Made by a program: the position numbers and the translations under genes. Source: Saccostrea echinata (lineage: Eukaryota). From it: a DNA stretch of 64,000 nt. The stretch's first letter is position 1. Every line of letters begins with the position of its first letter. Location: assembly GCF_033153115.1 (NCBI RefSeq), contig NW_026889753.1, positions 9,548,001-9,612,000 of the forward strand. Reading direction: 5' to 3'. Below the pieces are notes generated by a model. It did not search any database, had not been told where the DNA came from, and saw nothing but the letters and a program-made list of their open reading frames with translations. Shown here one piece after another: positions 3,253 through 6,047 of this stretch.

Positions 3253-6047
3253 CTACATGACAAAGTCCAAGATTAAATGGTCACCATCTTCTGGTATGTA
3301 TCTACTCACATCTGCAATTGTGAGGTTTGAAAATTTATCATTTCATCTAGTCATTCACTTGATTGATTCATAGGATAGGGCGGTTGGGTTGTAAAAAATG
3401 ACTTAATAAAAATTAAATTTTATTCTTTTTTAACTTTAGAGTTGAAAATGGATGACCTTTTACACACAGTCGATTAAAACAACAATCTGTTCCGTTTATT
3501 TCATCAGTGGTAATTTTAATTTCTTACCCAGACTTAGGACGGTAGATGGCGCTTTAACAAACCGCCAGTAAGTCAAACCAGGAGTACCAGCTAACATATC
3601 TTTTCCAAGCTCTTCAACAACATAACCATGCTTGCTAGAGTGTCTCGAAGAGAATCTGAAAATACAAATGTACTTGACTGATTTAGAAAACAAAAGATTG
3701 TTGTCTCTATAGAGTGAATCAATGGGGCCTCTTTTCCACTCTGTTCTGTGTTACACATATACCGGTAATTAATGTGTAAAAAAGAACAGCGGATAAAAGG
3801 CCCCTGTGAGTGAATCGATACAAATGGTTGCAAAATCCACATGCTATACAAGATCCTACGATGGCCGATATCAGCCTGTACATATTTCGACAGCTTTTGA
3901 AATTTGTACACCTAAAATGTACACTGACATGTACATTTTGCACTGACAGTGCACACTTTGCGCTCTTGTCTTTTTTCTGTACATGTACAAAATGGCAAAA
4001 AGGCAAATGTCAAAAAGTGGACGCATAATATATATACTCTTTTAATTAAAATTCCTTCTTGGTGAAGTCTATTAAATATGAATGAAATTGTACAATGTCA
4101 CAGGGAAGAGTTAAACAGTAAAACAGGCTGAAAAGTCACAGTATTATAGGAAATGTTGTGAACAGAAAACTCTAAACAGTGCTCACTGAAGAGTTCTAAT
4201 TCCATTATAATTTTACACGTTTGGAATGAAAAGATAAATTAAAGTACTCTTAAAAATTTTAGGTACTCTTAAACCACGATCAATTAATTGTAAACACCAT
4301 TTGCATGTATTTTCTCAATTCATGTAATCAACGATTTCTGTTCACTAGTACTACATTGTCTTTGAACATTTTTCCTGGAGAAATTATGGCTTGTACTTTG
4401 TACTGAAAATAAGTAAGATAAATGCAATATGTACTCTCTTTACATGATTATGTTTTTTTCAATGTCTGATAAACATTTTCATTAGTGATAAGAGCTTCCT
4501 TAGAGGCTATTAAATGACAAAATCACCAATTAAAAATGCTTCTACAAACATTTCTGTGCAACTCCATGTCAGTACCAATATAGAGTTGTAATTCATACTG
4601 GATAAATTTCTTTTGATTAAAAAAATGTTTATTTATCTTTTTGCATATTGCCATCTTTATCAGTATTTTTATTTATTCCCAGCCCTCCTATTTCTTTCTC
4701 TTTACTTTTATTTTTTAACAAAAAATGTGCTTATTTTTATACGTATACTAAGTATTTATGATATGAATGATTTTGGCTTGAAATGTGAAAGTTAAAATAG
4801 TTTTTGTGGACCTTACTACTTTCTAAATGCTTTTGATTTAAAAAACAATGGAGTGTATACATGTATTATGTATTTTCTATATAATCTTCATTTTCGGGGG
4901 GGGGGGGGGGGGGAGATGTCAGTTTATTGACAGAGGTGCAAAGAACTGATTGTGGAAGGCAATTTTAATTGATGATTTTTTTTTCTTCATTCTTTTATGC
5001 AGATTGATTAACGGGTCGCAAGGGTTAATAACATTTTTTTTTAATTTGTCAGCCTTTTTTTACAGTAAAACTCTTCCCGGTGCCTTGTACAATTTTATTC
5101 CTAATTAATGGTCTTCCCCGACCAGGAATTTTAATTAAAAGGGTATGTGTTTTATGCGTCCGCTTTTTGACATTTGCCTTTTTGCCATTTTGTACATGAA
5201 CAGACAAAAGGCAAGAGCACGAAGTGTGCACTGTCAGTGCAAAATGTACATGTCAATGTACATTTTAGATGTACAAATTACAAAAGCAGTCGAGATATGT
5301 ACAGGCTGATATCGGCCATCGTAAGATCTTGCTTCTTTGACTAAACAGACTGGGGTCCTGTCTGAGTACGGGAATGCAGTCAGTGCTTAATCATGTTAAT
5401 TGTTAGCTGTAACGTAACAAAAACAACCTGTTTACAAAAAAAAATCTACTCACTGGAAGTTTTTGTCGTCATCAGCCGCCTGCTCCATGAACCTGATGAA
5501 TGGTTGACCAGCCTTTGACGTCACATTCTGTTCGTATTCAAACCAAGGTTCCGCAAACTGATTACGTATAGTGTACTTGATTGTTATGTTGCTTTCTGAA
5601 ATGTCAGATTGATAGAGACAATACTTTTTCATGTCATTGAATTCTTTTTTTCAAATGTGGAAGAGAGAGAGAATATAATACCATTATCAGTTGATTGAAT
5701 ACTTACTTAGATACTGTAAATGATTTTATTTTTTAATATTTAACATGCCATGACTTCTTGTTACTGTATTTATAGATGTTTTATACATTCCATGTAAAAA
5801 AAAATTTGAGAATAAAACTTGAATTTTCTAACCGCACCTCTTGCACTATTCTCATTCATCTCCTTACAAAGAGTTTGGGCGTGCAGAATCCATCCATCGC
5901 AACTGTCAAAACAGAAATTTTAATTGTGAAAAGTTATTTAATTTGTAATATTTTGTTTCGATTTATATCATTTAAATCGAGTTACAATACTTACCAAAGA
6001 CAAGATAAACAAAGAATAAGAAGACCTAGACTATTTTTGAACAGCAT
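3253..6047 (-). CDS. Secreted transcobalamin/intrinsic-factor beta-domain-only protein (DUF4430-like, putative cobalamin binder), 164 aa, 5 coding exons
   Basis: Exons 6047-5995, 5902-5838, 5643-5454, 3655-3528, 3311-3253. All introns GT-AG, phases consistent, 495 nt total. Product: MLFKNSLGLLILCLSCLCCDGWILHAQTLCKEMNENSAREFNDMKKYCLYQSDISESNITIKYTIRNQFAEPWFEYEQNVTSKAGQPFIRFMEQAADDDKNFQFSSRHSSKHGYVVEELGKDMLAGTPGLTYWRFVKAPSTVLSLDVSRYIPEDGDHLILDFVM*. Hydrophobic N-terminal signal. C-terminal pattern V..G..F..M..AA..F.F...G.V...TYW.F..P...L...V..Y.P.DGD.L matches the TCN/IF beta domain as I recall it. Confidence 0.8.
3849..5331. mobile_element. Long-TIR foldback element in intron 3 of the DUF4430 gene
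   Basis: About 3849-4130 is the reverse complement of about 5048-5331 (CAAGATCCTACGATGGCCGATATCAGCCTGTACAT... / ...ATGTACAGGCTGATATCGGCCATCGTAAGATCTTG). AT-rich non-coding interior. No clear TSD. Confidence 0.8.

What the first reader, a model, noticed from the sequence alone, without database searches (positions are those of the whole stretch)
3253..6047. Hidden 5-exon gene for a secreted, beta-domain-only transcobalamin-like protein (candidate invertebrate vitamin B12 carrier)
Seen: five short exons with GT-AG introns join into a 164-aa ORF. It has a signal peptide, a short Cys-containing linker and about 105 aa ending ...TYWRFVKAPSTVLSLDVSRYIPEDGDHLILDFVM. The ORF track shows only fragments. 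Known: this pattern matches the C-terminal beta domain of transcobalamin, intrinsic factor and haptocorrin (DUF4430). Vertebrate carriers normally also have a large alpha domain, but beta-only Tcnb-type proteins of fish are reported to bind cobalamin, and bivalves are very rich in B12. Inference: a minimal secreted cobalamin or corrinoid scavenger lacking the alpha domain.
Basis: partly seen in the sequence, partly recalled or inferred. Interest (0 to 1): 0.8.

Follow-up and report, generated by a model that had tools for sequence, protein, structure and literature searches.

The report
Oyster beta-domain-only transcobalamin-like secreted protein
This is a real, expressed five-exon oyster gene for a small secreted protein. 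It consists only of the vitamin-B12-gripping "beta" half of the vertebrate B12 carriers, so it is a good but untested candidate for an invertebrate B12 carrier.

Summary
The five-exon minus-strand model at 3253-6047 is real. All four introns are GT..AG and the phases are consistent.

It is identical to an existing NCBI model, "uncharacterized protein LOC133179136 [Saccostrea echinata]", so the gene is annotated but unnamed rather than hidden. A spliced contig from a public run confirms introns 3 and 4 to the base.

The protein has an N-terminal hydrophobic signal-like segment, a Cys-x10-Cys linker and one domain of about 105 aa. A profile of 11 oyster homologues finds the beta domains of the vertebrate cobalamin carriers as its top nine hits among all PDB sequences:
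- intrinsic factor, E 9e-14
- haptocorrin, E 4e-4
- transcobalamin, E 0.01-0.1

ESM-Atlas neighbours are short DUF4430 proteins of chordates and molluscs. Pfam DUF4430 is not reached by this protein; three paralogues score below threshold. Two AlphaFold runs failed (pLDDT 42-44), so the fold is not confirmed.

There is no alpha domain. The gene is one of five tandem copies on this contig, plus two copies elsewhere, all under purifying selection. Orthologues exist in Crassostrea, Magallana, Ostrea and Saccostrea.

Cobalamin binding is inferred from fish Tcnba/Tcnbb and isolated TC-beta, not shown here. I class it as a new molluscan member of a known kind, of moderate interest.

The parts
5995..6047 (-). 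Exon 1: ATG and a signal-peptide-like hydrophobic segment (MLFKNSLGLLILCLSCL plus 2 nt of a Cys codon)
   Evidence: The donor is TG|GTAAGT. The translation equals residues 1-17 of P0007. No read support was obtained.
5838..5902 (-). Exon 2: Cys-x10-Cys linker (CDGWILHAQTLCKEMNENSAR)
   Evidence: The acceptor is ...ttgacag and the donor is G|GTGCGG. The motif CxGWILHAxxLC is conserved in the S. cucullata, C. virginica and M. gigas orthologues. No read support was obtained.
5454..5595 (-). Exon 3: first half of the beta domain (beta1'-beta2' hairpin and helix, with NIT and NVT sequons and the invariant GQPFIRFMEQAA)
   Evidence: It is 82-89% identical to five paralogues. Its 3' boundary at 5454 is confirmed by the spliced contig. 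It aligns to IF 284-335.
3528..3655 (-). Exon 4: middle of the beta domain (G97-Y98 and the TYW motif)
   Evidence: Both boundaries are confirmed by contig record 9 of run X2 with 0 mismatches. Y98 aligns with Tyr362 and W117 with Trp377 of transcobalamin.
3253..3311 (-). Exon 5: C-terminal strands (VSRYIPEDGDHLILDFVM) and the TAG stop
   Evidence: The acceptor at 3311 is confirmed by the spliced contig. It aligns with IF ...VADYIPFNHEHITANF and TC ...IADYRPKDGETIELR.
3115..3252 (-). 3' untranslated region (minimum extent)
   Evidence: Contig record 9 of run X2 runs without mismatch from 3311 down to 3115.
3849..5331 (.). Transposon-like insertion inside intron 3, with 247-nt inverted arms at 3849-4095 and 5085-5331. 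It is not part of the coding unit, but it explains the 1.8-kb intron.
   Evidence: arms 90% complementary. (at least 40 arm copies in the genome). The paralogues have about 300 nt between e3 and e4.

Best explanation
The locus is an expressed five-exon gene of the rock oyster Saccostrea echinata (LOC133179136). Its 148-aa product would enter the secretory pathway through an N-terminal signal peptide. The mature protein of about 129 aa would be a short peptide, probably disulphide-stapled (C19...C30), followed by a single domain homologous to the beta domain of the vertebrate cobalamin carriers intrinsic factor, haptocorrin and transcobalamin. It has two conserved N-glycosylation sequons. In the vertebrate carriers the beta domain makes the first contact with cobalamin. 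It holds the nucleotide side of the ligand and can bind it without the alpha domain. I therefore propose that this protein is a soluble extracellular corrinoid (vitamin B12) binder that works with the beta domain alone, as zebrafish Tcnba and Tcnbb do. It belongs to an oyster family of at least seven genes, five of them in tandem. Shown here: the gene structure, splicing of introns 3 and 4, purifying selection, homology to the beta domain, and absence of an alpha domain. Inferred: secretion, glycosylation, the disulphide, corrinoid binding, and any carrier, storage or sequestration role.
For: Gene model. Spliced contig. Identity with NCBI protein P0007. Homology: IF beta domain E 0.0025 with a single sequence, 1.4e-11 with 5 sequences and 9.2e-14 with 11 sequences, when the top nine PDB hits are all IF, HC or TC beta domains aligned over residues 31-143. 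ESM-Atlas: DUF4430 clusters of 141 aa (Chordata) and 157 aa (Mollusca) at 0.92-0.95. DUF4430 is the only Pfam family hit among the paralogues, covering 8-70 of its 72 positions. Residues invariant in all 11 oyster proteins coincide with family-wide positions: G97-Y98 with TC P361-Y362, W117 with TC W377, and P136 and G139 with the TC YRPKDG motif. Tyr362 is described as a ligand-stabilising bulky residue in PMC4350170. Purifying selection: dN/dS 0.05-0.35 in e3 and 0.11-0.49 in e4. Orthologues occur in four other oyster species. Literature: isolated human TC-beta co-purifies with and crystallises with cobalamin (PMC5599065). The beta domain binds first and beta-only carriers exist (PMC11107200). 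[quoted passage not shown]
Against: Pfam DUF4430 is not reached by this protein, and its paralogues stay under the gathering score. No exon alone hits Pfam, and the six-frame genome search with PF14478 was blank. Both AlphaFold2 models are unusable (pLDDT 42.2 and 43.8) and Foldseek on one of them gave only noise, so the fold is unconfirmed. The positions matching haptocorrin Arg357 and Trp359 are Ser and Lys here. The vertebrate alpha domain supplies about half of the ligand contacts and has no counterpart. Tandem expansion of small secreted proteins in oysters is also typical of immune or effector families. Nothing here measures binding.
Confidence: 0.6

Rival explanations
1. The protein is a true homologue of the carrier beta domain, but the domain has been re-used in oysters for another ligand or for protein binding, for example as a secreted immune or recognition factor. 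It would not bind corrinoids.
For: There are seven paralogues, five in tandem, and the ligand-facing half (e4) is much more divergent (49-60% identity) than e3 (82-89%). One paralogue is annotated as fused to a fibrinogen-related domain, a typical mollusc immune module. There is no alpha domain to complete the pocket. The positions of two of haptocorrin's three bulky residues are not conserved.
Against: The invariant positions of the oyster family are the ones shared with IF, HC and TC. dN/dS is below 0.5 in e4, so this crude test gives no sign of diversifying selection. Beta-only relatives in fish bind cobalamin (PMC10778862). The fibrinogen fusion may be an annotation chimera, because an e5-like exon lies 2 kb downstream.
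Confidence: 0.3
2. The five exons are the 3' part of a larger gene whose upstream exons encode an alpha domain, so the protein is a canonical two-domain carrier.
For: Exons 1 and 2 and introns 1 and 2 have no read support in the two runs laid. A 'cobalamin binding intrinsic factor' is predicted in C. gigas (bioRxiv 10.1101/2021.10.08.463682).
Against: Exon 1 starts with ATG and a signal-like hydrophobic core. The NCBI model and four orthologues of 148-158 aa share this start and the linker motif. No ORF upstream as far as 16000 resembles carrier sequence. The Pfam Cobalamin_bind search found nothing in the genome, but its controls were silent too, so that result is weak.
Confidence: 0.04
3. 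The ORF is a chance splice of short frames or a decaying pseudogene with no function.
For: Intron 3 carries a 1.5-kb transposon-like insertion. The contig depth for this copy is modest (13.9) next to the paralogue contigs (up to 412).
Against: The reading frame is intact, the phases are consistent and the splice sites are canonical. A spliced contig matches without any mismatch. Orthologues are 62-84% identical in three genera. dN/dS is well below 1.
Confidence: 0.02

Closest known systems
Zebrafish Tcn-beta-a / Tcn-beta-b (Tcnba, Tcnbb), the beta-domain-only cobalamin carriers of ray-finned fishes (Benoit et al. 2018, J Biol Chem 293:17606; seen only through citing papers PMC10778862, PMC11107200 and PMC9730659)
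   Same: Both are small secreted proteins made of a signal peptide plus a single transcobalamin-type beta domain, with no alpha domain. The nearest ESM-Atlas cluster to the oyster protein is a 141-aa chordate DUF4430 cluster.
   Different: The oyster family is in a protostome. It has its own N-terminal Cys-x10-Cys peptide, is expanded to at least seven copies, and does not reach the Pfam DUF4430 threshold. Binding is measured for the fish proteins and not for the oyster one.
Human gastric intrinsic factor, beta domain (PDB 2PMV, 3KQ4)
   Same: It is the best sequence match: E 9.2e-14 and 54.5 bits over IF 280-391, collinear to the C-terminus. Both N-glycosylation sequon positions (NIT and NVS/NVT), the YW motif and YIP are shared.
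   Different: IF carries a 270-aa alpha domain that closes over the ligand and helps bind cubilin. At the position that the haptocorrin alignment equates with Trp359, the site of IF's single bulky residue (PMC4350170), the oyster protein has Lys; it keeps an aromatic residue (Tyr98) at the Tyr362 position instead.
Transcobalamin and haptocorrin beta domains (PDB 5NO0/5NP4, 8IXT, 2BB6, 4KKI)
   Same: It is the same domain (E 4e-4 to 0.14). The invariant oyster Tyr98 aligns with Tyr362, so the pattern of a single bulky residue is the TC-like one described in PMC4350170. Isolated TC-beta binds cobalamin (PMC5599065).
   Different: The similarity is much weaker than to IF. There is no alpha domain and therefore no His-on coordination loop. 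The equivalents of haptocorrin Arg357 and Trp359 are Ser and Lys.
Pfam DUF4430 (PF14478), mostly bacterial and archaeal proteins plus the C-terminus of eukaryotic carriers
   Same: It is the only Pfam family that any member of the oyster family hits, and the hit covers almost the whole model (8-70 of 72). The Atlas neighbours carry it.
   Different: Scores are 14.9-19.5 bits against a cut-off of 23.8. The window's own protein gets no hit at all.

Membership tests
Eukaryotic cobalamin transport proteins (TC / IF / HC) | C-terminal beta domain homologous in sequence to those of IF, HC and TC | tested here: met
   Profile of 11 oyster sequences against PDB: IF 9.2e-14, HC 4e-4, TC 0.012-0.14. The top nine hits are all this domain, aligned end to end.
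Eukaryotic cobalamin transport proteins (TC / IF / HC) | N-terminal alpha6/alpha6-barrel alpha domain (Pfam Cobalamin_bind PF01122) | tested here: not met
   The whole protein is 148 aa, and residues 1-40 are a signal-like segment plus a linker. Pfam gives no PF01122 hit on P0007 or its homologues. It is therefore not a canonical member.
Eukaryotic cobalamin transport proteins (TC / IF / HC) | Beta-domain fold (two beta sheets plus one helix) superposable on TC-beta | tested here: inconclusive
AlphaFold2 gave pLDDT 42.2 and 43.8.
Eukaryotic cobalamin transport proteins (TC / IF / HC) | High-affinity binding of cobalamin | not testable with these tools
   This needs recombinant protein and a binding assay.
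Pfam DUF4430 (PF14478) | Score at or above the gathering threshold of 23.8 bits | tested here: not met
   P0007 has no hit at E up to 10. P0009 scores 19.5 bits, and P0011 and P0012 score 14.9 bits each. The single exons and the six-frame genome search gave nothing.
Beta-domain-only carriers (fish Tcnb class) | Signal peptide plus a single TC-type beta domain, with no alpha domain | tested here: met
   The orthologues of 148-158 aa have the same layout.
Beta-domain-only carriers (fish Tcnb class) | Common descent with fish Tcnba/Tcnbb rather than independent loss of the alpha domain | not tested
   No fish or deuterostome sequence could be obtained. The Atlas neighbour (a chordate 141-aa DUF4430 cluster, score 0.95) is only a lead.

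The most novel reading that the evidence does not exclude
Oysters, and perhaps other bivalves, carry their own expanded family of beta-domain-only cobalamin binders. These would have arisen independently of the fish Tcnb proteins and would act as the extracellular B12 capture and storage system behind the very high B12 content of bivalves. In the subfamily of this gene, the conserved N-terminal CxGWILHAxxLC peptide, with its invariant His25, would stand in for the missing alpha domain by capping or coordinating the upper face of the corrin.
Probability: 0.15. Interest if true: 0.75.

Novelty: new member of a known kind. Interest (0 to 1): 0.5.

Why it matters
Extracellular vitamin B12 carriers are well studied in vertebrates. 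In the literature I could search, none has been characterised in a protostome. Bivalves are among the richest animal sources of B12, and how they capture and hold it is unknown. The one preprint on oyster B12 points only to a predicted 'intrinsic factor' gene. This locus gives a concrete, small and easily expressed candidate, together with six paralogues and orthologues in five commercial or wild oyster species. The question can therefore be tested directly with a binding assay.

If the protein binds B12, it would show that the beta domain alone works as a carrier outside ray-finned fishes. It would also bear on how the two-domain vertebrate carriers were assembled. If it does not bind B12, it is an example of the carrier domain being re-used in an expanded oyster gene family.

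Tried and rejected
- **Pfam on the single exon translations** (e2, e3, e4) gave nothing. The pieces are too short, so this is uninformative.
- **Six-frame search of the genome with PF14478 and PF01122** gave nothing. For PF01122 the control genomes were silent too, so the result says nothing about whether oysters also have a canonical alpha-plus-beta carrier.
- **HMMER search of 1.84 billion representatives with e3** found three oyster relatives and one spurious WD40 repeat protein, P0004, which I discarded.
- **A third homologue search with P0003** found only P0003 itself, so the family could not be traced beyond Ostreidae with these tools.
- **Two AlphaFold2 jobs** (alignments of 5 and 11 rows) gave pLDDT 42-44.
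- **Four papers are not held in the library**: Benoit 2018 and the TC, IF and HC structure papers. Residue roles therefore come only from PMC4350170 and PMC5599065.
- **Diversifying selection on e4** is not supported by pairwise Nei-Gojobori estimates.
- **The joined step was left out.** Whole-protein searches used database protein P0007, which search for homologous proteins returned and which a script showed to contain the five exon translations in order.
- **The run of N near 7200-7340** was left untouched.
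Full report
**Observation**

The feature lies on the minus strand. Reading the reverse complement of 3200-6300 and locating the boundaries by script gives five exons:

| Exon | Coordinates | Length |
|---|---|---|
| e1 | 6047-5995 | 53 nt |
| e2 | 5902-5838 | 65 nt |
| e3 | 5595-5454 | 142 nt |
| e4 | 3655-3528 | 128 nt |
| e5 | 3311-3253 | 59 nt, including TAG |

Each intron begins with GT and ends with AG. 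The phases are consistent, and the exons sum to 447 nt, which is 148 codons plus a stop. Its length of 164 aa is a miscount. The mechanical ORF list shows only fragments.

**How the whole protein was handled**

A HMMER search of 1.84 billion representatives with e3 alone found oyster proteins of 152-174 aa. A follow-up homologue search with one of them returned P0007, 'uncharacterized protein LOC133179136 [Saccostrea echinata]', 148 aa. A script showed that the five exon translations occur in P0007 in order at residues 1-17, 19-39, 41-86, 88-129 and 131-148. The four residues in between (C, E, Q, D) equal the split codons TGT, GAA, CAA and GAT.

P0007 is therefore the product of this locus. 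The window is from the S. echinata genome, and the gene is already annotated, though without a name or a precomputed Pfam domain. All whole-protein analyses below use P0007 and its database homologues.

**Expression and splicing**

Only two public runs, from one sample and one study and with the library type guessed as RNA, hold parts of the stretch. When they are laid on 2900-6400, run X2 contains a 360-nt contig with no mismatch. It covers 3115-3311, skips 3312-3527, covers 3528-3655, skips 3656-5453 and runs 33 nt into e3. Both skipped pieces have CT..AC ends on the plus strand.

That is the predicted splicing of introns 4 and 3, to the base, with at least 138 nt of 3'UTR. The genome has no contiguous e3-e4 copy, so the contig is best read as cDNA.

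Exon 3 is also covered by many deeper contigs (up to 412) that carry mismatches and diverge exactly at 5452. These are transcripts of paralogues. No listed contig covers e1 or e2, so introns 1 and 2 rest on the NCBI model and on conservation.

**Family and selection**

The genome holds seven loci with e3-, e4- and e5-like exons.
- Five are on the same contig and strand within about 128 kb: C4 at 9425-27k, 9482/9500k, 9514-15k, 9540-41k and this one at 9551-53k.
- One is on C16 and one on C25.
- Three of the C4 copies correspond to the annotated proteins LOC133179134, LOC133179135 and LOC133179468.

Homologues annotated as uncharacterised proteins occur in Saccostrea cucullata, Ostrea edulis, Crassostrea virginica and Magallana gigas. 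The orthologues of this particular gene are 62-84% identical and share the e2-encoded motif CxGWILHAxxLC.

Pairwise Nei-Gojobori estimates give dN/dS of 0.05-0.35 for e3 and 0.11-0.49 for e4. Both values indicate purifying selection, so these are functional coding genes.

**What the protein is**

The N-terminus has a hydrophobic core typical of a signal peptide, as do 9 of the 11 homologues. Two N-x-T sequons (N42, N63) are conserved.

By sequence, the remaining 105 residues or so are a beta domain of the vertebrate cobalamin carriers.
- P0001 alone finds gastric intrinsic factor residues 281-390 as its best PDB match (E 0.0025).
- A profile of five oyster proteins gives 1.4e-11.
- A profile of eleven gives 9.2e-14 for intrinsic factor, 4e-4 for haptocorrin, 0.012 for rat transcobalamin, 0.015 for the isolated human TC beta domain and 0.031 for bovine TC. 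The first nine of 177,635 distinct sequences all belong to this one domain and are aligned collinearly to their C-termini.

Independently, the ESM-Atlas feature search places P0007 next to DUF4430 clusters of 141 aa (Chordata; 0.95 and 0.92) and 157 aa (Mollusca; 0.93). Of its 30 hits, 27 are in that family set.

Residues invariant in all eleven oyster proteins coincide with family-wide positions in the printed alignments:
- G97-Y98 aligns with P361-Y362 of TC and HC.
- W117 aligns with W377.
- P136 and G139 align with the YRPKDG motif.

Tyr362 is one of the beta-domain bulky residues said to stabilise the ligand. TC has only that one, and the oyster proteins show the same pattern, with Ser and Lys at the haptocorrin Arg357 and Trp359 positions (PMC4350170).

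**What failed**

Pfam does not recognise the protein. There is no hit for P0007, P0001, P0003, P0005 or P0006. Three paralogues get DUF4430 hits below threshold (19.5, 14.9 and 14.9 bits against a cut-off of 23.8), although DUF4430 is the only family hit and the match spans nearly the whole model.

Single exons and six-frame genome searches with PF14478 and PF01122 were blank. The PF01122 search is uninformative because its controls were silent too.

Two AlphaFold2 runs on alignments of 5 and 11 sequences gave pLDDT 42 and 44, and Foldseek on the first returned noise.

**Mechanism**

The literature supplies four relevant points.
- The ligand buries about as much surface on the beta domain as on the alpha domain (PMC11107200).
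- Isolated human TC-beta co-purifies with cobalamin and crystallises with cobalamin, cobinamide and an antivitamin (PMC5599065).
[quoted passage not shown] 2018, which is not held in the library).
- Short DUF4430-only proteins in teleosts and TCN-like genes in amphioxus and acorn worm are noted in PMC4350170.

On this basis the most likely function is a secreted, glycosylated, beta-domain-only corrinoid binder. This step is inference.

The main rival is that the domain was re-used for another ligand in an expanded oyster family (0.3). The readings 'part of a larger alpha-plus-beta gene' and 'pseudogene or chance' are poorly supported. There is an ATG with a signal-like start shared by the orthologues, nothing carrier-like upstream to 16000, an intact frame, a spliced transcript and dN/dS well below 1.

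**Novelty**

Beta-domain-only carriers are a known kind in ray-finned fishes. In the searchable literature I found nothing on such proteins in molluscs. The only DUF4430 and oyster-B12 items are PMC4350170 and a preprint that mentions a predicted C. gigas 'intrinsic factor'. I class the locus as a new molluscan member of a known kind. Interest is moderate, because it makes the question of how bivalves handle B12 directly testable.

Noticed in passing
window 3849-5331 (arms 3849-4095 and 5085-5331): Intron 3 holds a transposon-like element with 247-nt inverted arms that are 90% complementary. The arm occurs at least 40 times in the genome, often as inverted pairs 0.9-2.5 kb apart. The paralogues have only about 300 nt between e3 and e4, so this is a copy-specific insertion.
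   Followed up: partly
window 5037-5276: A contig of run X2 differs from the window at 21 positions, and 17 of these are A>G on the plus strand. That pattern looks like hyper-editing, inside one inverted arm. The gene is on the minus strand, so the RNA would be antisense or would come from another copy of the element.
   Followed up: no
G000:C16:16973212-16975834 (L006, L012); protein P0002: The NCBI model 'ficolin-1-like' (174 aa) joins e3 and e4 of the C16 paralogue to a piece of a fibrinogen C-terminal domain (PF00147, E 2.8e-18). An e5-like exon lies about 2 kb downstream. This is either an annotation chimera or a real fusion.
   Followed up: partly
window e3 5454-5595 versus e4 3528-3655, compared with the C4 paralogues: Synonymous divergence between this gene and its C4 paralogues is 0.4-1.0 in e3 but above 1.5 or saturated in e4. 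This suggests gene conversion or nucleotide-level constraint on e3, whose segment GQPFIRFMEQAA is invariant apart from one Q-to-S change (P0009) across all oyster homologues.
   Followed up: partly
G000:C4:9514108-9515404; protein P0013 (LOC133179468, 181 aa): This paralogue has a C-terminal extension that ends in a strongly hydrophobic tail (11-residue hydropathy 2.45 at residue 170). It could be a GPI-anchored or membrane-bound variant of the family.
   Followed up: no
G000:C4:9482195-9500795: The copy at 9500k has intact e3 and e4, but its only e5-like match lies 18 kb away, and no annotated protein for it appeared among the hits. It may be broken or have a very long intron.
   Followed up: no
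window 5839-5901 (e2); P0007 residues 19-30: The linker motif CxGWILHAxxLC has two Cys 10 residues apart and a His that is invariant in the five-sequence alignment A2 (the four CxGWILHAxxLC orthologues plus P0003). It is specific to this gene's orthologue group and absent from the other paralogues. Its role is unknown.
   Followed up: partly
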